Source of the DNA: Guillardia theta CCMP2712
Taxonomy: Eukaryota > Protista > Cryptophyta
Direction: 5' to 3'
Length of the DNA stretch: 64,000 nt
NCBI RefSeq assembly: GCF_000315625.1
Contig: NW_005434667.1
Coordinates: forward strand, 467,160 to 531,159
The position numbers and the translations under genes were made by a program. Each line of letters starts with the position of its first letter. Within the stretch, counting starts at the first letter, position 1. This document shows positions 18,208-58,926 of the stretch, in pieces. Below the pieces are notes generated by a model. It saw nothing but the letters and a program-made list of their open reading frames with translations, did no database searches and had not been told where the DNA came from.

Positions 18208-19230
18208 TCAAGATATTCTGCATATTTTCTCATGACTACCTCCAGTGAACGCTGGCTGTTGGACGTGTAGTTCTCCTCCTTTGGACTTTTGCCGCTTTCC
18301 CTTCCTCCTCTCTTCTTCAAGCTGGGTCAAGAACCCTTTCGAACTTGTCTGAGACGCTCGTAGCTGGGTTCTGAGGTCCTTCCCAGTGCAGTGGACGGGA
18401 GTGTTCTGTTCTCCCTCATGTTTTCTCTTCACTGATTTTCTTTCCACGTTCACCTTCACCTTCTTGAGCTGATCTGCCATGGTCTTGAGCTTCTCTCCCA
18501 TCGACGCTGCGGATGCCTTGCATTCCTCCAGCAGCCTCACGCATTCGTCGGTCCTACTCGGCACTTGCATGACGGGAGTCAAGAGCAGCTTCTGGATCTC
18601 TGCCTTGAGTGCTTCCAGCCTCTCCAGCACCTTCACGCCTTCGCCGCGCCCCTCCCCTACATCTTCGGCTTCGCCTGACAAGCTGGTGGTCCGTGACCTG
18701 GCCATCTGACGTCTGCCTGTGAGTGACATGGAGGGGTTTCCATCTTGATCAGGCGTCTCAAGCTTGACGGGCGAGGATGGGCGATCATCTTGAGCTTTAC
18801 CAGTGTCACCTGGACGAGCATTGGTGTCTCCCTTCTGCATCTCCCAATCATCGGCTTCTTGCGTCTTTCGCTCATCAGCTCCTTGGGTTTGCCAATCATC
18901 GACTACTTGCGTCTCTCCATCATAAATCGCTTGCGTCTCTCCATCATAAATCGCTTGCGTCTCTCCATCATAAATCGCTTGCGTCTCTCCATCATAAATC
19001 GCTTGTATCTCTCCATCATAAATCGCTTGTGTCTCTTCATCATCAATCGCTTGTGTCTGTTCATCATCATCCGCTACTTGTCTCTCTCCTCCATTCCCTT
19101 GGTGTGGCTGGTTGCAGCTGTCAGCCTCCATGTCGAGCCTCCTGACGTGAGAGAATCTCGACGGCTCCATGGCAGCATCACAACTCACCCTCTCTCGCAC
19201 CGGGGCAGCGTCCTGACTCTTGTTCGCCAT
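18208..19230 (-). CDS. TQ-repeat / coiled-coil protein, copy A
   Basis: Intronless 340-aa ORF with 7 core (D/Y)DGETQAI units. Near-identical to 25503-26437 in inverted orientation. Confidence 0.7.
   Translation of the reverse strand: MANKSQDAAPVRERVSCDAAMEPSRFSHVRRLDMEADSCNQPHQGNGGERQVADDDEQTQAIDDEETQAIYDGEIQAIYDGETQAIYDGETQAIYDGETQAIYDGETQVVDDWQTQGADERKTQEADDWEMQKGDTNARPGDTGKAQDDRPSSPVKLETPDQDGNPSMSLTGRRQMARSRTTSLSGEAEDVGEGRGEGVKVLERLEALKAEIQKLLLTPVMQVPSRTDECVRLLEECKASAASMGEKLKTMADQLKKVKVNVERKSVKRKHEGEQNTPVHCTGKDLRTQLRASQTSSKGFLTQLEEERRKGKRQKSKGGELHVQQPAFTGGSHEKICRIS
18901..19068 (-). repeat. 24-bp coding minisatellite (7 units)
   Basis: Tandem TATGATGGAGAGACGCAAGCGATT-like units on the minus strand. 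Confidence 0.9.
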
Positions 19231-20002
19231 CAGGCCGCAAAGAGGGTAGGAAGAGCTGGAAGGCCAGGGAGGGTGGAGAAGAGAGAGAAAGTGAGGGGAG
19301 GAGGTGAGGGGAGGAGCAGAGCGGAGCGGAGAGAGAGAGCTAGGAGGGCAAGCTAGCTAGGAACGCTCACCAGGAAATCCGTTTCCTCTGAGTACGGCAG
19401 TCTTTTACTCAAAAGTACGGCAGTAGTAGTGTATTGACTCGGCCGGGTGCTGGTGCCGGCGGGCCCGGCCCGTGCCCGACCGGTGGGGATGAGGGCCGGA
19501 TCACTCAAGTTTGAAAACAATGATTCCTGCCCCTCCCCCCCCTGGGGATCCTGCCATGGCGGGGGCGTGAGAAGACGAGTTCGGAGAGAAGAAGCAGAGG
19601 AGGAGTAGGTGGTCTCAGGAGAAGAGAGGAAAAGTACACTGTGTTGAGAGCGCTACTTGTCACTTTGAGAAGAAATATGCATTCAGCTGTTGTTGACAAC
19701 GTTGCATGAACAAGGTCTCTCTCGTTGAATGTCGTGATATTGAAGCTCTTCACACAGCATGTTTATATATTTAGACATGAGAATAACGAAATATCGCTAG
19801 ATTCTTATGCAAGACAACACGAGATACCTAAACAATCCAGAGTGACTTGAAGTCTGCAGGATACATTCACATGTTGATCTCGCATAGTACTCCGACATCT
19901 TCATGATCAGGTTAATATTTGCGGATCTCTCACATATGAGTCTGACCACTATCTGACAGAGTGTAATACTTGAAACCCTGCCTTCACAGCTGCTGTCTCG
20001 CA

Positions 20003-22343
20003 ATGGGAATAAGCGGGTTACTTCCTGTCCTTCGAAATATCATTGAGCCTCGCCACGTCAGTAAATATGCCGGCAAGAAAGTTGCAGTAGATACGGTAGT
20101 ATGCTCTCCTCTGGTCTCATCGTTGGATTTTAACCAGCATGGATTGAGCAGTATAGCTGGTTGCACAAGGGCTCGTATGGTTGTGCGTTGGAGCTATGCA
20201 CTGGCGCTCCGACAGACAAGTACACGTTTCTAGGCTACAGCGAGACTCGATAGCTAATCCTTTTTGACGTCCATCAGGTATGTCACCTACTGCTTGGACC
20301 GGGTGAAGATGCTTCTTCATTACAAGTAAGTCCTCTTGTCTCATTCTGGTAGCCGGAGGTGACGAAATCAGGGTTATTCCGGTCATGGTATTTGACGGCG
20401 CGAACCTCCCATCGAAACAAGGAACAGAAGTTGATAGAAAACTTTCTCGCTTGGAGAATCGCTCAAAGGGAATCCAAGCGCTAAGGTGTGAGGGTGTCCG
20501 ACGAATTGTGCCGATCGACTGACCTGATGCAGAGCTGACAACCGATCTGCCGCAATCGAATACTTTCAAAGGGCTGTGGATGTGACACCAGCTATGGCCT
20601 ACAAGCTCATCAAGGCCCTGCGGAAGCTCAACGTGGAATGTATCGTCGCACCTTATGAGGCTGATGCTCAACTTGCGTACTTGAATCTGCAAGGGTATGT
20701 ATCTGCAGTTATCAGGTCTTCATGTGTTTGTTTTAAAGGTCATCAGAGTAATCAGTCTAGTCAGTGAGGACTCGGACATCATTGCATTCGGGGCTAAGGC
20801 AGTTCTCTTGAAAATGGACAAGGATGGCTACGGAGAAGAGTGAGTGCTGTCGCATGGCTGTCTCTGTTCTCGTCGCTCATAGCACTTGCCCTAGATATCG
20901 CCAGAAATTGCTCGGAGCTTGCTCAACAATGAATTTGAGTGGTTGGGAGCCAGAGCGTTTCACTCAGATGTGCATATTTGCTGGTTTGTGAGCTGCACAG
21001 CAATGGTTGGGTGTGAACTGTGTTTGCAAGGTTGCGACTACTTAAAATCGTTGCCTGGAATGGGAATCAAGAAAGCTTATGCTGCAATCAATAACATCGG
21101 AGGCCAAAGGGCTCCATTGGATGAGTGCTTTGTGCGGGCGATCAATAAGCTCCGATTAGATGGAACCCTAGTCCCTTCGGTATCATCTTGAAGGATGGGT
21201 GGATTTTTCTGATTCTTGGTTTCAGGATTATCTCAAGGATTTTGAAAGAGCTTATCTTACTTTCCAATTTCAGGTGATGCCAGGTCAAGGGTTTTGCAGT
21301 ATTGATTACCTCTGCAGAGAGTTTTCGACCCGGAAAAGCAGATGCTGGTCACTCTGAAACCTTTGCCTGAGGTTCGTGATACCTCTTTTAACCATCTTGA
21401 TGTTGACCTCTGCGAGCAGGGAGAAGATTTCTCGTCATGTGATTTCATTGGGCCCGACCTCTCGGCAGACATTGCTCTGGCAGTTGCACGAGGTGACATG
21501 AATCCGTGCACGCATGAGTGGTTCGAGGAGACAGCAGCTCCTTGCAGCAAACGGGACGCGCCAATCGTAGAAGATGCTCCATGTGTCAGCACACACGATG
21601 AGATAGGAGCGAAGCCACAGGGGGAAGATGGATTTCAGCATGTGGATGAGATGGTCAGTAGTGACAAAGCAAATAAGGACGAAGACTTTTCTACCCTACA
21701 TGCAGATTCAAGCTCCTCTGTTGTCTTCAAGGCAAAAGCATCCCCTGGCAGTTCTGGAAGCGCATTCTCTAACGCTAAAGTTGGCAAGTTCCAGAGCTCA
21801 TTGATGAATTACGTCTCAGTCAGTGAGCAAGCAAAAAAGAGTTTTGTTCCTCCCCGCCGTCATGGAGATGCTGATCGCAGTCCTGATGGAGCCGATCGAA
21901 CGGACTTGCAGTTGAAGAGAAAGTTTGAATCCGACGAGAGCATGCAAGAGGGCGACAACGCAAGAGGGAGATTCAAGACGCGCAACATCTTCTGTGCTGA
22001 CCTCAGCAGCAAGCCGATCACCAGCAAGTTCTTCAAAGGCCGTGAGAGCGTCAACGAGAACAACAAGGATCAGGAGGAAGACGGCGAAGGTGACCCGGAG
22101 TTCTCGCTGCAAGTGAATCCAGCGGCTATGAGCGAAGATGTGACAGCAAAGATCGAAGCCTTGCAGTACAACCCATCGGTCAGGTACATGAGCCCCATGG
22201 TCACCTTGCAACGAAACTCGGTAGGGGTCAGCTCAAGGATGACGCTCAAGCCTGTGCTGCCATCGCAGAAGAAAAGTCTCAGGGTAGAGGCTCTGGCGTC
22301 TTTCGCCCTCGAGAAGAAGTCAACCAATACAACACTCCCTTGA
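20003..22343 (+). CDS. EXO1: Exonuclease 1 (XPG/Rad2 family, multi-exon)
   Basis: [52 protein letters not shown] and [16 protein letters not shown] (H3TH). Disordered C-tail containing ITSKFF. Confidence 0.95.
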
Positions 22344-22479
22344 TGTAAATCATTACGTAGCGTTTTGTTAGAAGAAACATATTCTTTCCCACTGAACCTT
22401 CCCTGTATTCGTCAAGTCTAATGCGCTCCGAGAGTTTGACAGAAGACTTTCATGCGAAGGCGAGGTACAGCATCATGTC

Positions 22480-22740
22480 AATCAGGCGTCATCTTCGTAC
22501 ACCACTCGGACCCGGTAGGCTGCAGTGTTTTTGCTTGGCGCCTTACCTTGCATGAAGGATTTAAAGGTTTTCTTGACTCAGGTTTTGTGCTCTTGCAATG
22601 CCCCGCCGATCCCTTTCTCTTTAATTCGCTTCTTCTCGTCTTCGTAGTAATACCTGAATGTCTCCGTTAGGGTCTTCTTATGCTCGGCGGAGGATCCTTC
22701 TGCTGAAATTTCTTTGTTGCTGGAAGTTTCGTCGGACATG
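22480..22740 (-). CDS. Small hypothetical charged protein
   Basis: ORF MSDETSSNKEISAEG..KKRIKEKGIGGALQEHKT in the gap between EXO1 and the calmodulin promoter. Exon structure is unclear. Confidence 0.3.
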
Positions 22741-23845
22741 TTGCAGGATTCGTCGAATTCCCTCGAATCGAGAAGGAAACCAAGAGGAAAACAACCTACA
22801 GCATGAATGAGCCCATTTTGTCTACAGATGATGTCCAAAATCCCATCCCATCCATTCATCTTTCATCTGCTATCTCTCTTTCCCCAAAAACATGAGAAAA
22901 AATCGAACAAATCTAGAACAAAACAACAGCAGCAACATCGCTGCCGCCGCGCTGTCACCATCGCCTCCACAAAGAGTCTTTTCGATTCATCAGCTCAAAC
23001 TCGTCATCATGATCGCAAGCATGTCCGCGCTATCTCATCTCCTCGCCATCCCACCCCCTCCCTCCTCCCTCGTCTGTTTCTCCCTTGCCACCCCGGTTGC
23101 CACCCTGTAATCTGACAGGCCCTCATCCCCGCATTCAATACTCATCTCCCTCATTCTCAACTCAGCGTGACTGGCGCCGTGACTGTCATCACCCGTTCAA
23201 AAAATATTGGAAATCTTTATACCAGGGGTCCTTTTTCGTGTAAATTATGGGGTAGTTGTCTTGTTCCTGTGGGGAGTTCTAGGAAGTACTACGTGGACCT
23301 ATGACCACGACCGTTGGGAATCAACTCTTACCAGGTAGGGTAGTGTCAATCTGTGGGGTAGGGTGATAAAAAATAACTTCACTTTTACCAAAATCGTCTG
23401 AAAGACCTTAGTAATGGGGGGGTGGGGTATGAATGGGATTTCTGGATAGGGTAGGGTACTGAGACATGGCCAATGTGTGTGTGGGGGGGTGGAGGTGGTC
23501 GTGTGTTCAAGTTCAAAATTGATCCACCCCACCCCCATCAAAACTTTGCAAAGTACCCTGTACCCCTCATGGTAAAGGATAAGGAGGTCAAAAGTACCCG
23601 TTCAATTCTAACGTACGGTGCAATACCCACTGTGTTCATGGTCAGGTACCCCTCCATCTTTTCAAATGAACTATACCCCTACCTCACCAAGCTTTGATAC
23701 CACCAGTACTTTTAACGCGTGTTTGGTTTACCAATGTAGGGTACTGGGTGATACCCACCCTTGGAAGAACAAGGATACAGTACCCCACCTCTGATGCAGG
23801 GTGGAAGACAGGTGGCGTCCTCGCGCGCCAGTTCATCGTTCATCA

Positions 23846-24825
<980 letters not shown>

Positions 24826-25417
24826 AATCGCCGCAGTTCTCATGTTTCCAGCATGGATACAAGTCGGTTATTCCATCTTCTTGATACCCTTAGTGAGAAC
24901 GGACACGTAAGCCATGATCACAAGAAGATTCACCAAATGACATGGATCATCGGAAACGATTTGTTTTCGTGCACGAGAAGCTCAAGTTTTTTCATCAAGT
25001 TTCATGGACGATGAACAACCTTGGTTGATTCATTATTAACCTAGTTTAAACCTCACTTTTTTTGACATGTGCATTAAATGGTTGTGCTACACCCATGCAC
25101 CTGTTGTTTTTAAAATAGTTCACCGTAACTGGTGGGTTGTAAGTCGATCTCTAGCCTTGCAGTGCCGGCTGGCAGTGAGAGGCCCGACTCCCGAGCTGCG
25201 GCTGACTCAGTGATCTTGAACTTCGAATGCCGGGGCCAGCCGACGGCCGGGCCTCCAGGGAGTCGCATCCGAATCAGATTACCCCTCATCCCCACCGTTA
25301 CCCTTCTCCTCCACCTGAGTTCCTGCCTGAGAGTTCCTGGGTGAGAGTTCCTGGCCAACTCGCCTAAGTTGAGCAGCCTCCTCGTCCGTCCTCTCAGCTC
25401 CTCAAACCTCGCTGCCT

Positions 25418-26698
25418 ATGTTGGATTCCGATGACGAGCCTCTTGCTCGTCCCTCTCACCTCTCACCCCACCCCCGCAGGAATGAAGACTCGTTGCAAAA
25501 GAGGGCGAACAAGAGTCAGGACGCCACCCCGGTGCGAGAGAGGGTGAGTTGTGATGCTGCCATGGAGCCGTCGAGATTCTCTCACGTCAGGAGGCTCGAC
25601 ATGGAGGCTGACAGCTGCAACCAGCCACACCAAGGTCGAAGCATCTCACTCCGTCCCTCTCATGGTGACGTCGAGGGCGACAGCACCACTGACGACGAAA
25701 TGTATGCGGGAGACACTGTTCCGTACAACTTGACATCGGGCCAGAATGGAGGAGAGAGACAAGTAGCGGAAGATGATGGAGAGACACAAGCGATTGATGA
25801 TGAAGAGACACAAGCGATTGATGATGAAGAGACACAAGCGATTTATGATGGAGAGACTCAAGCGATTTATGATGGAGAGACACAAGCGATTGATGATGGA
25901 GAGACACAAGCGATTTATGATGGAGAGACACAAGCGATTGATGATGGAGAGACGCAAGCGATTTATGATGGAGAGACGCAAGCGATTTATGATGGAGAGA
26001 CGCAAGTAGTCGATGATTGGCAAACCCAAGGAGCTGATGAGCGAAAGACGCAAGAAGCCGATGATTGGGAGATGCAGAAGGGAGACACCAATGCTCGTCC
26101 AGGTGACACTGGTAAAGCTCAAGATGATCGCCCATCCTCGCCCGTCAAGCTTGAGAAGCCTGATCAAGATGGAAACCCCTCCATGTCACTTACAGGCAGA
26201 CGTCAGATGGCCAGGTCACGGACCACCAGCTTGTCAGGCGAAGCCGAAGATGTAGGGGAGGGGCGCGGCGAAGGCGTGAAGGTGCTGGAGAGGCTGGAGG
26301 CACTCAAGGCAGAGATCCAGAAGCTGCTCTTGACTCCCGTCATGCAAGTGCCGAGTAGGACCGACGAATGCGTGAGGCTGCTGGAGGAATGCAAGGCATC
26401 CGCAGCGTCGATGGGAGAGAAGCTCAAGACCATGGCAGAGAACAATGCAAGTTTGAAGAGAAAACATGAAGAAGAACAGACGGTCTCAGCCCAGCTGAGA
26501 AACAATGAGAAGGACCTCAGAACCCAGCTACAAGCTTCTGAGACAAGCTTGATAGGCCTACAGTCTGAGCTTGAAGAAGAGAGGAGGGAGGGAAAGCGGC
26601 TCAAATCAAGGGAAAGAGAGCTCGTTGAGATTATCTCCAATGCTCGCCGCATTCTGGAACAAGGCAAGCATCCAAATCCTACAAACACTGAATCATAG
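25418..26698 (+). CDS. TQ-repeat / coiled-coil protein, copy B
   Basis: 426-aa ORF with 10 core ETQ units plus 2 degenerate TQ units and a C-terminal coiled coil. Confidence 0.75.
   Translation: MLDSDDEPLARPSHLSPHPRRNEDSLQKRANKSQDATPVRERVSCDAAMEPSRFSHVRRLDMEADSCNQPHQGRSISLRPSHGDVEGDSTTDDEMYAGDTVPYNLTSGQNGGERQVAEDDGETQAIDDEETQAIDDEETQAIYDGETQAIYDGETQAIDDGETQAIYDGETQAIDDGETQAIYDGETQAIYDGETQVVDDWQTQGADERKTQEADDWEMQKGDTNARPGDTGKAQDDRPSSPVKLEKPDQDGNPSMSLTGRRQMARSRTTSLSGEAEDVGEGRGEGVKVLERLEALKAEIQKLLLTPVMQVPSRTDECVRLLEECKASAASMGEKLKTMAENNASLKRKHEEEQTVSAQLRNNEKDLRTQLQASETSLIGLQSELEEERREGKRLKSRERELVEIISNARRILEQGKHPNPTNTES
25772..26011 (+). repeat. 24-bp coding minisatellite (10 units)
   Basis: Tandem (G/T)ATGATG(G/A)AGAGAC(A/G/T)CAAGCGATT units. 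Confidence 0.9.
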
Positions 26699-26829
26699 AC
26701 GGTACTTGCAGCAACTTTGCAGAACCTGCTGCACTTGTTACTGACTTTCAATAGGCAGGTGTGCAAAGTTGACAAAGTTTGACAAGGTTTGCCACTTTCT
26801 CTGAGACTACCGTACCTCAAATCATCATC

Positions 26830-27310
26830 GGTCATGACGGTACCGTCTGCCGCTCCTGCCCTCAGCCATGGTGCCCGGCACAGGGTGCTGCCGCAGTGCG
26901 GCTGTAGCCAAGCCTGTTCGAGTTAGTACCCGGATGGTGACGGTGGCAATAAAACCGTTTCAAAAGCTTCGCTGAGTCGGATTTCATCATTCATGAACTT
27001 GGAAGCTATTCACTGAGTCAAGAAGTTACTCTCACTGAGTCAGCTCAGCGGCCAGTGACTCGGCACTCCAGCCGGGGTCAGGGCAGGCCCAGGCTTGAAC
27101 TTCGGAACGCGGCACCAGGCCCTCAGGCCCGTGATGCGGTCGCTTGTCACTGGCAGTGCGGCGGTGGCACCGCCGGGCGCCGGGCCCCGGCCGCCGCCCG
27201 CCGGGCCGTCACGGTGTCCGATCGCCGGCTTTGCCGGACTCTCAGCCTGGTGACTCAGTGGAAGGTTCCTAGCTCAGCCCATACTTACTTTTACTCAAAG
27301 TTAAGTAATT
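26830..27310. repeat. GC-rich dispersed element with CACTGAGTCA and TTTTACTCAAAGTTAA motifs
   Basis: Shares exact 16-17-mers with 56756-56806. Confidence 0.6.
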
Positions 27311-27327
27311 ACACCGTCGCCGGCCTC

Positions 27328-28185
27328 ATGCCGCAGTCCAACAAAGATGCCGTCGTGACCCCGGAGGAGGATGACGAGGTGACGTACGTCAAGACCGAAA
27401 GATGTGACGAGGACGAGGACAAGAACCATCTAGGTAGCAAGAGAAAACGCAAGGAGGACACTCCTATCAAGAAAAGACTCCAGTCGGACCTAATGGAGGA
27501 GCCGGCGCGGACCGCTCGAGCGGCGAGGAGATTGAATGTAGACGAGGACAAGGAGGACGACGAAGACGGCGAAGAGGAGGAGAAAGACACAGGAAGGGAA
27601 TCAGGGGTACGATTGGAGTCCGATAGTAGCGAGGTTAACCACGATGATGAGGGAAGCGACGATGAAGGTGTCGCCAGGGACGGGGATGATGATCTTGACG
27701 GAGAAGGTCATGAACATTTTCATGATACGCAGTCCACGACACATGAACACGAATCATGGTCACAATCTGGCGAATTCAGTCCTTCTGATGATTCACAAGA
27801 AGGAGATGAAAGCGCACATGAAGCTTCGCAACAAAGTTCGAACGTGGAACAGCAGGAGGTTGAGCATACAGAACAAGATGAGCTCGCACAGAAGATCAAG
27901 TCTGATGCTCCGTTGGGAATTGAGGTCAAACTCCCAAAGGACGAGAGCGTGGATGAAGAACGATTTGTCAGTCTCGAGGATGATCTCAAATCAGTCAGGA
28001 AGGAAAACGATGAACTGAAGCGAAGAGAAGTCGAACTGATGGCAAGTGTCAAAGATCTGAGCAGAAGAAACGAAGAGCTATTGGAGATCGTCGAGAGCGC
28101 CAAACAAGTCCTCTCGAGCATTCTCCCTTCCTCCTGTGGCGAACCCTCCTACGGTGGCGAGACATTTGAAGGACACACGATTTAG
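27328..28185 (+). CDS. Divergent third paralog of the TQ/coiled-coil family (acidic, SQ/TQ-containing)
   Basis: DTPIKKRLQSDLMEEPARTARAARRLNVDED aligns with DATPVRERVSCDAAMEPSRFSHVRRLDMEAD. The C-terminal RNEELLEIVESAKQVL aligns with RERELVEIISNARRIL. Confidence 0.7.
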   Translation: MPQSNKDAVVTPEEDDEVTYVKTERCDEDEDKNHLGSKRKRKEDTPIKKRLQSDLMEEPARTARAARRLNVDEDKEDDEDGEEEEKDTGRESGVRLESDSSEVNHDDEGSDDEGVARDGDDDLDGEGHEHFHDTQSTTHEHESWSQSGEFSPSDDSQEGDESAHEASQQSSNVEQQEVEHTEQDELAQKIKSDAPLGIEVKLPKDESVDEERFVSLEDDLKSVRKENDELKRREVELMASVKDLSRRNEELLEIVESAKQVLSSILPSSCGEPSYGGETFEGHTI

Positions 28186-56739: not shown

Positions 56740-58080
56740 TAACCATCGCCGGGCCTTTTACTCAAAGTTAAATCGGCAGTGCAGGCCCGCCGCCGCCCGC
56801 CGGGCCTGAGAGTTCGCCGGTACAGCGGGCGGGCAGTGCCGCCAGTCCCGGCCGCGCCACCGAGCGACCGGGCCCGGCCGGGCCCGGGCGGCCCGCCGCC
56901 CGGCTCACTGGCCTTTGAGTAAAGGCAGAGTCAGCCTCGGAGGCTCGTTCCGGGATATCATCGCGGCGGCTCGGATCAAGTTCAGAGTCAACCGTGGCCC
57001 CCGCCGCCGCCGGCGCACCCGGGCCCGGGGCCCAGCTACTGCTGTCTCCCGACGCGGCGCCCCGGGCCCTTGACAGTCACGTGATCATGCGGATATCATG
57101 GCTCTTCAGATAAATCAATTAATTTATCTCGCAACATCTCTCTGTAAGCTCGGTCTTTACCCCCCGCGGAAAGAGACGCAAGGTACCAAACCGTAGATTC
57201 GTCGTCACTCACCGGTTCAATTCTCAATCTTTTGAAGGGTGGGGGTGGTGCTGATCCTCCGAAAGCCTTTCCCGGATGCACCGTAGGGAGAAACCGCGGG
57301 ATGAAGGATTCCAGGGGGGATTTTTGCGATTTTCACAAACTATCTTGTGTTGACTTGAAATTATTGTGAAGATCTTGGACGTAAGAATATTGTTTGAAAT
57401 TACTGAGGCCGCCCAATCAAGGCTCGGGATGCGAGGAGGCGGGGTCGGGTAAAAAGCAATATTATGATAATAATTATGATTGTTAAATAAAAGATTAGTA
57501 TATGAAAACGAGTCTCATCGAACGCAGAAGGGTGTGATTTCAAAATTGGGTTTTAGAGTTTTTGCCGTGAATACGGGGCTGTTTAAAACTGTTTTCATCC
57601 TGATGGAAACATATATTTTGGAAATATAAAACAATTTATACTGTGTTTTTAACACATTGTTCTCGGTACTGCTATTTTATCCCTGCACTAGTTATAAATC
57701 ACTGAATTGTGACTACCGTCCCTGAGGACCCGGCCCGGCGGGCCGCCGGGCGGCCCCAGTGCGAACCGTCAGCCCGGAGGACTCCCGGACGAGTCGGCCG
57801 GGCCCTCACTCAGGTTCCGCCGGCCGATTCTACGGTATTACTAGTGAAGGTGTAAGTCGAAGGTGTACGACCTAGCCTGAAAAAAGCCCTGGTATCTTTA
57901 ACTAGCCTGGCAGGCCGCCGCACGTTAAGTCAAAAGTACGCACTGTACTCTTTACTCAGTGTCACACCGGGCTCGCCGCCGGAGTCCGATCGTGCTCCGA
58001 GGCCGGGCTCCGAGTCGCCGCACTGCGGCAGGCTGAGGCCCTCGGAGTGACGCCAGTCGTGTACTAGATGAGTCTCAACG
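56740..58080. mobile_element. Putative non-autonomous element: GC-rich arms around an AT-rich core
   Basis: GC-rich 56740-57090 and 57720-58080 share inverted short matches. The core 57096-57715 is AT-rich. Motifs are shared with the elements at 19.4 kb and 27.2 kb. No transposase is seen. Confidence 0.4.
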
Positions 58081-58926
58081 TTACATCCTCCCTCCCGAGT
58101 CCTCCTCCGAGTCGTTGTCCGACAACCCGATCATGCCCTTGAAGTCCACCAAGGTCTTGTAAAGAGGACGGAATTTCTTCCTCACCTCCCTGATCAACTG
58201 CTCCCTCATCTCGTCTTCGTCGCATCCGGCCTCCTCCTCCTTCCTAATCGACCGCACGAGCCGAGCAGCGTCGGACACCGCGTGGGCCAGGCCTTGGCAC
58301 ACCCCCTTCATGCCTTGCTCGATCTGCATCATCCTCATAGCATTCTCCTCCAGTGCTTTCCTCAGGGCCTCGTTCTCTCGCAGCAGGGCCTCCACCGACC
58401 CAGCAGCCTGCCCACCAGCTCGCTCCTCCTCGCCCGCCCATGAACCTCCACAAACCCGACCGACCAAGCTGCCGAGGTTCGGAGGGTCGTCGCCGAGTGC
58501 TAGTCGCCTCCTCTTGACGCCTTCCATGGGGGGAGTGCACTGGACCAGCGTCTTGCTCGGCGTCTCCTTCTTCCCCCCATCCGTCAGAGCACAAACCGAA
58601 GCATGCACCCGAAACATCAGCCGCACCTCCTCCTCCTCGCCATGGTTGACGACGATCTCGTCGCCATTGCGCAGATCGCACAGGCAGAACCATGGCAGTG
58701 AGTTCTCGGTCCCATCCGAGGAAACGATCACGGTCGTCCTCTTAGATAAGCTCTCGATCTTCGCTCGAGGAGCAGGGGACGATCCCGTCCGGATGATCTC
58801 GAACTGAACGCTGTCAAGAGAGGCCTTCAGGTTGGGGGGCACCATGATGTTGCTGAACGTGAACTTGTCCGTGCTGATCATGACACACCTGTCTGGCATC
58901 TCCAGGTAGCACCAAGCTGGCGCCAT
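58081..58926 (-). CDS. Degenerate FHA-like domain + coiled-coil protein, intronless
   Basis: AWCYL..FTF..FEIIR..AKIESLSKRTTVIV..DLRNGDEIVV..LMFRV follows the FHA strand pattern but lacks the GR and SxxH motifs. Also KRRRL and a coiled coil LLRENEALRKALEE. Confidence 0.6.
   Translation of the reverse strand: MAPAWCYLEMPDRCVMISTDKFTFSNIMVPPNLKASLDSVQFEIIRTGSSPAPRAKIESLSKRTTVIVSSDGTENSLPWFCLCDLRNGDEIVVNHGEEEEVRLMFRVHASVCALTDGGKKETPSKTLVQCTPPMEGVKRRRLALGDDPPNLGSLVGRVCGGSWAGEEERAGGQAAGSVEALLRENEALRKALEENAMRMMQIEQGMKGVCQGLAHAVSDAARLVRSIRKEEEAGCDEDEMREQLIREVRKKFRPLYKTLVDFKGMIGLSDNDSEEDSGGRM

What the first reader, a model, noticed from the sequence alone, without database searches (positions are those of the whole stretch)
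18208..28185. Three-member TQ-cluster/coiled-coil family bracketing EXO1: candidate lineage-specific DNA-damage mediator
Seen: copy A (minus, head-to-head with EXO1) and copy B (plus) carry 8 and 12 TQ sites in an 8-aa repeat, (D/Y)DGETQAI. Copy C shares the TP...RRL N-terminal motif and the terminal coiled coil and has scattered SQ/TQ sites. Established: acidic-context TQ is the ATM/ATR consensus, pT-x-x-I is a preferred ligand for some FHA domains (e.g. Chk2), TP and RxL are CDK site and cyclin-docking motifs, and MDC1, Rad9 and Mrc1 use such clusters. Inference: tunable phospho-scaffolds co-regulated with EXO1, with no BRCT domain.
Basis: partly seen in the sequence, partly recalled or inferred. 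Interest (0 to 1): 0.75.

Follow-up and report, generated by a model that had tools for sequence, protein, structure and literature searches.

The report
TQ-repeat coiled-coil orphan gene beside EXO1
A gene found so far only in the alga Guillardia theta and its close relative Hanusia phi encodes a floppy acidic protein carrying up to twelve copies of a short motif whose core matches a proven DNA-damage phosphorylation and docking site of human MDC1, so it may be a home-grown damage-signalling adaptor, but only sequence evidence supports this.

Summary
The raw observation holds. Copies A (18208-19230, minus) and B (25418-26698, plus) carry 8 and 12 TQ sites in a 24-nt/8-residue tandem repeat, and the gene head-to-head with A is EXO1.

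The "three-member family" does not hold as stated.
- B is the conserved gene. Its only homolog outside this genome is a transcript-derived Hanusia phi protein. That protein shares B's N-terminal motif, three TQ units (ETQLIED) and the C-terminal coiled coil.
- A is a damaged inverted partial copy. It lacks B's 5' end, the TP site and a conserved 36-codon block. A frameshift destroys the conserved terminal helix motif. Gene conversion keeps its middle 98% identical to B.
- C shares only two short collinear motifs and the same gross layout. BLASTP, hhalign and HMMER give no support.

The repeat core ETQAID matches the ATM-phosphorylated Thr4 motif of human MDC1 (DTQAID), which is the ligand of the MDC1 FHA domain. 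Sea-urchin MDC1 orthologs carry 8-residue-period ETQA(I/V)D arrays.

A PIKK-written, FHA-read docking array on a coiled-coil dimer is therefore the best mechanistic guess (about 0.35). It is untested. I obtained no Guillardia RNA data. The CDK/cyclin reading and co-regulation with EXO1 are weak. The scan's notes held no other report on this stretch or on similar DNA.

The parts
25418..26698 (+). Copy B: the conserved gene, 426-aa ORF. The public model P0001 starts later, at Met62.
   Evidence: ORF. Ortholog P0030 from Hanusia phi aligns to the N-motif, the TQ units and the C-terminal helix up to the stop. AF2 gives residues 1-257 disordered and helices at 258-305 and 314-417.
25526..25612 (+). 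B N-terminal linear motif: TPVRER...EPSRFSHVRRLDMEAD.
   Evidence: EPSxxSHVxRLDM is invariant between B, A and Hanusia. The TP..RRL part resembles C: N-terminal local score 60 against shuffles 31.6 +/- 5.8, 0 of 500.
25772..26059 (+). B array: ten near-identical 24-nt units coding (D/Y)D(G/E)ETQAI (the last reads TQVV), plus two older TQ units (DDWQTQGA, DERKTQEA). 12 TQ in all.
   Evidence: Thr codons vary only synonymously among the units (ACA/ACT/ACG/ACC).
26189..26668 (+). B C-terminal helical/coiled-coil region. It ends in the motif ELVEIISNARRIL.
   Evidence: AF2 pLDDT reaches 97. 34% identity to Hanusia over 132 aa.
18208..19230 (-). Copy A: inverted partial duplicate of B, 340-aa ORF, derived and damaged.
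   Evidence: Similarity to B spans only A 19231-18291 and B 25501-26600. Identity is 98% over 603 nt, and dS is 0.72 in the 3' part. A has a T-to-A change at the TP site, a 108-nt in-frame deletion of a block conserved in Hanusia, and a 3' frameshift that leaves the terminal motif out of frame.
18853..19068 (-). A array: seven core units plus two older TQ units. One core unit has Thr changed to Ile. 8 TQ in all.
27328..28185 (+). Copy C: tandem neighbour of B, 285 aa (public model P0004). Same gross layout; homology unproven.
   Evidence: AF2 gives 1-209 disordered and a helix at 210-265. Four S/TQ lie at residues 134, 145, 156 and 167. No significant similarity to B, A or Hanusia.
20003..22343 (+). 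EXO1, several exons, head-to-head with A. The ATGs are 772 bp apart.
   Evidence: XPG_N and XPG_I on separate exon ORFs. The only PDB hits are human Exonuclease 1. The exons were not joined.

Best explanation
B is a real gene restricted to the Guillardia/Hanusia lineage. Its protein has a short conserved N-terminal motif, a long acidic disordered region and a C-terminal coiled coil that probably dimerises it. Inside the disordered region a coding minisatellite has recently expanded one 8-residue unit, from 2-3 copies in Hanusia to 10-12 in Guillardia. The conserved core of the unit is E-T-Q-x-I-(D/E)-D.

Inferred mechanism: an ATM/ATR-type kinase phosphorylates the Thr of each unit. This turns the array into a multivalent row of pT-x-x-I docking sites for one or more FHA-domain proteins, concentrated by the coiled-coil dimer. 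It would work like the TQ clusters of MDC1, Rad9 or Mrc1, but without BRCT or FHA domains of its own.

A is a 5'- and 3'-damaged inverted copy kept similar to B by gene conversion. It must use the EXO1-side intergenic region as its promoter if it is expressed at all. C is a neighbour of like layout and uncertain kinship.

Shown: gene anatomy, ortholog, disorder plus helix, duplication history, motif identity. Inferred: phosphorylation, FHA reading, dimerisation, any link to DNA damage.
For: - Ortholog P0030 from the Hanusia phi dataset in EukProt is collinear from the N-motif to the stop codon. The Hanusia data reported in PMC5619915 are transcriptomic.
- The TQ units are kept as ETQLIED x2 plus DGDTQ.
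- The older diverged units in A and B still keep TQ. Thr codons differ only synonymously in B.
- Human MDC1 MEDpTQAID is an ATM site and the ligand of the MDC1 FHA domain, with Ile at +3 singled out as conserved (PMC3351161).
- Two sea-urchin MDC1 orthologs carry 8-residue-period ETQA(I/V)D arrays. P0013 has FHA plus tandem BRCT; P0015 has FHA and starts MDATQAID. Among the non-cryptophyte hits of B's array they rank eighth and tenth.
- All four proteins meet the stringent SCD rule of at least 3 S/TQ in 50 aa (PMC3564818).
- AF2 shows disorder across the array and a confident C-terminal helix.
- FHA and PIKK genes are present in the genome.
Against: - No expression, phosphorylation or binding data exist for Guillardia. 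The exact-sequence look-ups and metagenome scans found nothing.
- The units are 95% identical at DNA level, so their number reflects recent slippage rather than long selection.
- Only one ortholog exists to judge conservation, and the rest of the disordered region is also moderately conserved.
- One Hanusia TQ (DGDTQSY) is TV in B.
- About 150 unrelated repeat proteins (mucin-like, bacterial and others) also matched the array, so an xxTQxx 8-mer repeat is not rare.
- By the census's own estimate, about a third of sequence-defined SCDs in yeast are expected by chance.
Confidence: 0.35

Rival explanations
1. Fast-evolving orphan coiled-coil protein whose array is only an expandable acidic spacer. 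The 24-nt coding minisatellite grows and shrinks by slippage and gene conversion. TQ and Ile are passengers of the amplified unit and are not read by any kinase or FHA system. The protein's role, if any, lies in the N-terminal motif and the coiled coil.
For: - Units are 95% identical at DNA level, and the copy number differs between A, B and Hanusia (7, 10 and 2 core units).
- Many unrelated proteins carry similar xxTQxx 8-mer arrays.
- No family, fold or atlas match hints at DDR.
- A tolerates a Thr-to-Ile unit.
Against: - The positions kept between Guillardia and Hanusia units (E, T, Q, I, acidic at +4/+5) are those that matter for PIKK and FHA recognition. The variable one is +2 (A or L).
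- Old diverged units keep TQ.
- The match to a biochemically proven ATM/FHA motif is five of six residues.
Confidence: 0.35
2. Phospho-docking array of another pathway. One example is a kinetochore or spindle scaffold in the manner of KNL1/Spc7: a rapidly evolving phospho-Thr repeat array plus a C-terminal coiled coil. The Thr would be written by a different acidophilic kinase and read by a non-FHA module.
For: - The layout fits: an N-terminal short motif, a variable-number Thr repeat array and a C-terminal coiled coil.
- There are weak coiled-coil-type Pfam echoes to Mis12 and HAUS1, E 0.4-0.9.
Against: - The unit does not fit M-[ED]-[ILVM]-T.
- No RWD or other kinetochore domain is present. 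The Pfam echoes are far below cut-off and typical of any coiled coil.
- Gln at +1 is invariant, which points to PIKKs.
Confidence: 0.1
3. Cell-cycle (CDK/cyclin) regulated protein. The full-consensus TPxR/K site and the RRLxΦ cyclin-docking motif about 21 residues downstream are the functional core shared by B and C.
For: - B has TPVR...RRLDM and C has TPIK...RRLNV, at almost the same spacing.
- From my own knowledge, the RRLDM stretch resembles classical Cy motifs such as that of E2F1.
Against: - A reads AAPV, so it has no TP.
- Hanusia reads VTRLDM, so it has no RxL. Its model starts after the TP position.
- B's true start may be Met49, which would leave TP untranslated.
- No E2F-type site is enriched or placed in the promoters.
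Confidence: 0.1
4. A is a pseudogene, or a non-functional relic kept alike by gene conversion. "Bracketing EXO1" is then an accident of where a partial inverted duplicate landed.
For: - The 5' breakpoint at B codon 29 is sharp, with no older similarity upstream.
- The TP site is lost, and 36 codons conserved in Hanusia are deleted.
- A 3' frameshift leaves a relic of the terminal motif in another frame.
- The 5' two-thirds have dS 0.02-0.08 and the 3' part has dS 0.72.
Against: - The ORF is still open for 340 codons.
- dN/dS is 0.36 in the old 3' part (54 codons), which is below 1. B's own constraint could account for this.
Confidence: 0.5

Closest known systems
MDC1 (mediator of DNA damage checkpoint 1): the Thr4 motif and the TQXF cluster, especially the echinoderm MDC1 arrays
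   Same: - The core ETQAID matches human MEDpTQAID, an ATM site that is the ligand of the MDC1 FHA domain.
- It is a multi-copy TQ-x-hydrophobic cluster in an acidic disordered region. In human MDC1 such a cluster recruits the FHA ligases RNF8 and Pellino.
- Sea-urchin MDC1 orthologs carry the same 8-residue period and an ETQA(I/V)D unit.
   Different: - It has no FHA and no BRCT repeats, so it has no known way to bind gamma-H2AX.
- It is 250-430 aa, against 1700-2100 aa for MDC1.
- It has a C-terminal coiled coil instead.
- The similarity is confined to the repeat, so it reflects convergence or chance, not homology.
S/TQ-cluster-domain checkpoint mediators (Rad9/53BP1/Crb2, Mrc1/Claspin)
   Same: A disordered cluster of TQ sites that, once PIKK-phosphorylated, docks FHA-domain effector kinases. 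The sequence definition of an SCD is met.
   Different: In the known mediators the sites are irregularly spaced and not a perfect tandem array. They also carry BRCT/Tudor or replisome-binding regions. No sequence similarity was found.
KNL1/Spc7 MELT arrays
   Same: A phospho-Thr docking unit amplified into a rapidly evolving tandem array, upstream of a C-terminal coiled coil. Copy number differs between close species.
   Different: The unit consensus, the kinase logic (Gln at +1), the size and the missing RWD domain all differ.

Membership tests
S/T-Q cluster domain (SCD) proteins | At least 3 S/T-Q within 50 residues (stringent census rule, PMC3564818); the original rule allowed 100 residues | tested here: met
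   B has 12 TQ in 96 aa, A has 8 in 72, Hanusia P0030 has 3 in 20, and C has 4 S/TQ in 34.
S/T-Q cluster domain (SCD) proteins | Cluster lies in an intrinsically disordered region | tested here: met
   AF2 pLDDT is below 50 across both clusters. These are single-sequence models.
S/T-Q cluster domain (SCD) proteins | Phosphorylated by ATM/ATR/Tel1/Mec1 after damage | not testable with these tools
   No phosphoproteome was to hand. PIKK-type FATC loci exist in the genome.
FHA-ligand motif of the pT-x-x-I/L class | Thr with Ile or Leu at +3 | tested here: met
   TQAI occurs 9 times in B and 5 times in A, and TQLI twice in Hanusia. The preference is stated in PMC3351161.
FHA-ligand motif of the pT-x-x-I/L class | Phospho-dependent binding to an FHA domain | not testable with these tools
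   At least 30 FHA loci are in the genome. No partner was identified.
MDC1 family | N-terminal FHA domain | tested here: not met
   No Pfam hit in A, B or C at E<=1. The sea-urchin comparators do hit FHA.
MDC1 family | C-terminal tandem BRCT | tested here: not met
   The Hanusia ortholog ends at the same point as B, so no downstream exon is missing.
KNL1/Spc7 | MELT-type units and a C-terminal RWD domain | tested here: not met
   The unit is (D/Y)D(G/E)ETQAI. There is no RWD or KNL1 Pfam hit.
CDK substrate with cyclin-docking (Cy) motif | [ST]-P-x-[KR] site plus R-x-L, conserved in the family | tested here: inconclusive
   Present in B and C. TP is absent in A. RxL is absent in Hanusia, whose model starts after the TP position.
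   - BLASTP E 0.21.
- hhalign of the B/A/Hanusia profile against C gives probability 0.6%.
- Own-genome HMMER finds no cross-hit at E<=1.
- Hanusia against C gives E 2.2.
- Only end-segment shuffle tests are suggestive: 0 of 500 and 1 of 500. The segments were chosen after seeing them, and the second is inflated by heptad periodicity.

The most novel reading that the evidence does not exclude
Cryptophytes of the Guillardia/Hanusia clade evolved de novo a domain-less checkpoint mediator. It is a coiled-coil dimer presenting a copy-number-tunable row of ATM/ATR-written pTQxI sites that recruits an FHA effector. The array converges on the very motif that MDC1 uses (Thr4 and the echinoderm TQ arrays). 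A partial duplicate has captured the EXO1 promoter region.
Probability: 0.2. Interest if true: 0.6.

Novelty: new variant of a known kind. Interest (0 to 1): 0.4.

Why it matters
DNA-damage mediators outside animals, fungi and plants are almost unknown, and MDC1 itself has no recognised counterpart in algae. If the array is a real PIKK/FHA docking platform, it would show that such platforms can arise de novo from a coding minisatellite and converge on the same six-residue motif as MDC1. It would also give cryptophyte biology a first handle on checkpoint signalling. If it is not, the locus is still a clear example of a lineage-restricted gene with a slippage-driven coding repeat, mosaic gene conversion between inverted paralogs, and decay of one copy.

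Tried and rejected
1. **Own-genome hits of B on contigs C175, C88, C123 and C143.** They carried 10-15 TGA each and looked like further arrays. They are kb-long 8-nt satellites (AGTCATAG / TGACTCTA) that mimic a 24-nt period in translation. They are not related.
2. **Other genome hits of sea-urchin MDC1.** They are unrelated arrays such as MEDMERHG, plus one tandem-BRCT gene. There is no further TQ array, and ETQAID is coded nowhere else in the genome.
3. **E2F-type sites (TTTSSCGC).** 8 were found against 6.5 expected, and none lies in the relevant promoters.
4. **The 12-mer CTTTTACTCAAA.** It is shared by the A/EXO1 intergenic region and the 29 nt before C's ATG, and it looked like a common cis-element. 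It occurs 266 times in the genome against 10 for the control. It is the sharp end of a dispersed repeat of about 40-60 nt, sometimes with an inverted partner nearby, so it is a mobile-element end and not a regulon mark. It is not the cryptomonad spliced leader, which is a different 17-mer.
5. **RNA evidence.** Exact-product look-ups for P0001, P0002, the 426-aa ORF, P0004 and P0030 found nothing on record. Both metagenome scans were blank.
6. **Other searches without result.** Word searches with B, B residues 214-426 and C returned only the genome's own models. The ESM atlas gave nothing above chance. Rfam found nothing in the window.
7. **The 108-nt extra segment of B as a retained intron.** It is not one. 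It is in frame, not a clean GT-AG removal, and its peptide is conserved in Hanusia, so A carries a deletion.
8. **The 281-aa ORF at 58081-58926 (KRRRLAL plus a coiled coil) as a fourth member.** There is no similarity.


Full report
**Context.** The window is G000:C7:467160-531159 of an assembly of 87,145,349 bases in 669 contigs. Earlier notes of this scan call it Guillardia theta. The size, the intron-bearing genes and the nearest homolog coming from Hanusia phi fit that. The stretch holds, in order:
- copy A (minus strand);
- EXO1 (plus strand);
- a calmodulin gene (EF-hand exon at 24190);
- copy B (plus strand);
- copy C (plus strand).

EXO1 was checked exon by exon. XPG_N lies on the first coding ORF and XPG_I on two later ones. 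The only solved-structure matches at E<0.01 are human Exonuclease 1.

**Observation.**
- A is 18208-19230 (-), 340 aa. B is 25418-26698 (+), 426 aa.
- The arrays have a 24-nt period: 6.8 and 9.8 copies at 95% matches.
- A's array has 8 TQ and B's has 12. About 2 are expected from composition.
- The units read (D/Y)D(G/E)ETQAI. They are followed by older, diverged units DDWQTQGA, DERKTQEA and DDWEMQKG.

The excess of TQ follows automatically from amplifying one unit. The useful question is whether T, Q and the neighbouring residues are kept where sequence has had time to change.

**B is the real, conserved gene.**
- No Pfam family matches A, B or C.
- Three word searches returned only this genome's own models: P0001 and P0002 for B and P0004 for C.
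- The exhaustive HMMER pass over 1.84 billion representatives gave 161 hits. All but one are repeat-on-repeat matches.
- With B's array masked, only P0030 still aligns: 42% identity over 62 aa at the N-terminus and 34% over 132 aa at the C-terminus.
- P0030 is EukProt EP00960, Hanusia phi. Hanusia is described as a relative of G. theta, and the data reported for it are transcriptomic (PMC5619915).
- The alignment shows an invariant EPSxxSHVxRLDM block and a conserved STTDDE.Y.GDT..Y.L block.
- It also shows two ETQLIED units plus a DGDTQ, a long helical C-terminal half, and a terminal LV..IS.A..IL motif just before the stop codon in both species.

Two conclusions follow. B's stop codon is genuine, so the protein is stand-alone with no hidden BRCT or FHA exon. 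The public model P0001, which starts at Met62, cuts off a conserved motif.

AF2 on the single sequence gives residues 1-257 as disordered (pLDDT below 50). It gives two helices at 258-305 and 314-417, with pLDDT up to 97.

**A is a derived and damaged copy.**
- Similarity between A and B covers only A 19231-18291 and B 25501-26600.
- At the 5' side it stops abruptly at B codon 29, at 98% identity. No older similarity lies upstream. A therefore lacks B's promoter and first 28 codons.
- The TP of B reads AP in A.
- A lacks 108 nt that code the block conserved in Hanusia. This is a deletion in A, not an intron in B.
- One A unit has Ile in place of Thr.
- At the 3' end an insertion shifts the frame. 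A relic of the terminal motif can still be read in another frame, and A's ORF stops inside it.
- Divergence is mosaic: dS 0.02-0.08 over the first two-thirds, but dS 0.72 (dN/dS 0.36, 54 codons) in the 3' part.

So this is an old duplication whose centre has been homogenised by recent gene conversion. Whether A is still used cannot be told without RNA data.

**C is not demonstrably a member.**
- Against membership: BLASTP of B against C gives E 0.21. A B/A/Hanusia profile against C gives hhalign probability 0.6%. Neither own-genome search cross-hits. Hanusia against C gives E 2.2.
- For membership: there are two collinear short matches. One is TP(V/I)(R/K)xR...EPxR...RRL(D/N)(M/V) near the N-terminus. 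The other is EL(V/L)EI..(S/N)A..(I/V)L at the C-terminal end of the helix.
- Both matches beat composition-preserving shuffles: 0 of 500 and 1 of 500. However, I chose the segments after seeing them, and heptad periodicity inflates the second.
- C sits directly downstream of B on the same strand. It has the same layout of a disordered acidic N-terminal part and one confident helix at 210-265.
- Its four S/TQ lie at exactly 11-residue spacing, but their number is not significant for the local composition (p 0.07).

I put kinship of C at roughly even odds.

**The repeat unit and what it resembles.**
- Between Guillardia and Hanusia the unit keeps E(-1), T, Q(+1), I(+3) and acidic +4/+5. It varies at +2 (A or L).
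- The older units in A and B keep TQ but have lost the Ile.
- Thr codons in B's units differ only synonymously.
- Human MDC1 starts MEDTQAIDWD. Thr4 is phosphorylated by ATM, and the phospho-motif binds the MDC1 FHA domain. The authors single out the conserved Ile at +3 and note that pT-x-x-I is favoured by certain FHA classes (PMC3351161).
- ETQAID therefore shares five of six residues with a proven writer/reader motif.
- Independently, eighth and tenth among the non-cryptophyte hits of B's array are two sea-urchin proteins.
  - P0013 is annotated MDC1-like in Lytechinus pictus. It has FHA at 52-116 and tandem BRCT at 1514-1712.
  - P0015 is from Strongylocentrotus purpuratus. It has an FHA domain whose best PDB matches are MDC1, and it starts MDATQAID.
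  - Both hold 8-residue-period arrays of ETQA(I/V)D. In P0015 the array follows an SDTD-like motif. In human MDC1 the TQXF cluster that recruits RNF8 and Pellino lies downstream of conserved acidic NBS1-binding motifs.
- This is a functional parallel, not homology. The E-values (1e-16 to 1e-18) are repeat-inflated. The same list holds mucin-like, bacterial and other arrays of no relation.
- ETQAID is coded nowhere else in the Guillardia genome. Sea-urchin MDC1 finds no FHA counterpart there at E<=0.01.

**Mechanism.** The best-supported reading is an S/TQ-cluster adaptor. A PIKK phosphorylates the array Thr residues, FHA proteins dock on pT-x-x-I, and the coiled coil provides dimerisation or tethering.
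- The writer and reader families exist in the genome: at least 3 FATC loci and at least 30 FHA loci.
- Every step after "the motif is there and is kept in one sister species" is inference. I give it 0.35.
- The null rival is that the array is a slippage-driven acidic spacer. It is equally likely on present evidence.
- The CDK/cyclin reading is weak. TP is lost in A and RxL is TRL in Hanusia. If translation starts at Met49, TP is not even translated.
- A KNL1-like reading fails on unit consensus and domains.

**EXO1.**
- The conserved copy B lies about 3 kb beyond EXO1's last coding ORF, with calmodulin between them.
- Only the secondary copy A abuts EXO1, with 772 bp between the ATGs.
- Because A brought no upstream sequence of its own, it could be transcribed only from that shared intergenic region. 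Co-expression of A with EXO1 is therefore conceivable by promoter capture, but it is untested.
- Nothing argues that B or C is co-regulated with EXO1.
I did not test this, and I attach no weight to it.

**Limits.** I obtained no Guillardia RNA or protein data. Only one ortholog is available. The structure models are single-sequence. The searches for C used only the word index and the metagenome scan.

**Verdict.** The family is one conserved gene, a decaying inverted copy and a look-alike neighbour. The DNA-damage-scaffold idea is strengthened at motif level but remains a hypothesis.

Noticed in passing
window 25418-25600: The public protein model for B (P0001, 365 aa) starts at Met62. That cuts off the EPSRFSHVRRLD motif, which is conserved in the Hanusia phi ortholog. 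The true start is further upstream, at Met49 or Met1. A pyrimidine-rich ...CCCCGCAG acceptor-like site ending near 25480 could be a splice or spliced-leader acceptor.
   Followed up: partly
window 19402-19413, 27288-27299, 56755-56766; loci L012-L051: CTTTTACTCAAA is the sharp end of a dispersed repeat of about 40-60 nt that continues ...GTTAAGTTAAAAATCAGTACGAGGACAAT. The 12-mer occurs 266 times in the genome against 10 for the reversed control. Some copies have an inverted partner nearby, as in a MITE. One fragment lies 29 nt before C's ATG and one lies in the A/EXO1 intergenic region. It differs from the published cryptomonad spliced leader.
   Followed up: partly
P0013 (Lytechinus pictus) residues ~200-370; P0015 (Strongylocentrotus purpuratus) residues ~265-400: Sea-urchin MDC1 orthologs carry long 8-residue-period arrays of (M/L)ETQA(I/V)D(N/G). 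In P0015 the array follows an SDTD-like motif. The vertebrate TQXF cluster likewise lies downstream of the acidic NBS1-binding motifs. The papers I read did not mention this.
   Followed up: partly
window 27727-27831: Copy C's four S/TQ sites sit at exactly 11-residue intervals (residues 134, 145, 156, 167). This could be a decayed 11-residue repeat. TRF reports no DNA periodicity there.
   Followed up: partly
G000:C175:93500-97400, C88:15600-16250, C123:186500-192200, C143:1-660 (L004, L006): There are kilobase-long 8-nt satellites (AGTCATAG / TGACTCTA). In translation they mimic 8-residue protein repeats and create false protein hits with many TGA codons.
   Followed up: yes
window 24190-24444: A calmodulin gene with introns lies between EXO1 and copy B. 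Its first EF-hand exon is at 24190.
   Followed up: partly
L055 (G000:C3:481714-485022), minus strand, 610-aa open frame: This is the only Guillardia locus matching the BRCT region of sea-urchin MDC1 (E 2.2e-7). It is a tandem-BRCT-like C-terminus behind a Ser/Arg-rich region. No MDC1-type FHA was found.
   Followed up: no
window 58081-58926 (-): A 281-aa ORF with no significant Pfam family. It has a KRRRLAL stretch and a C-terminal coiled coil. It is not similar to A, B or C.
   Followed up: partly
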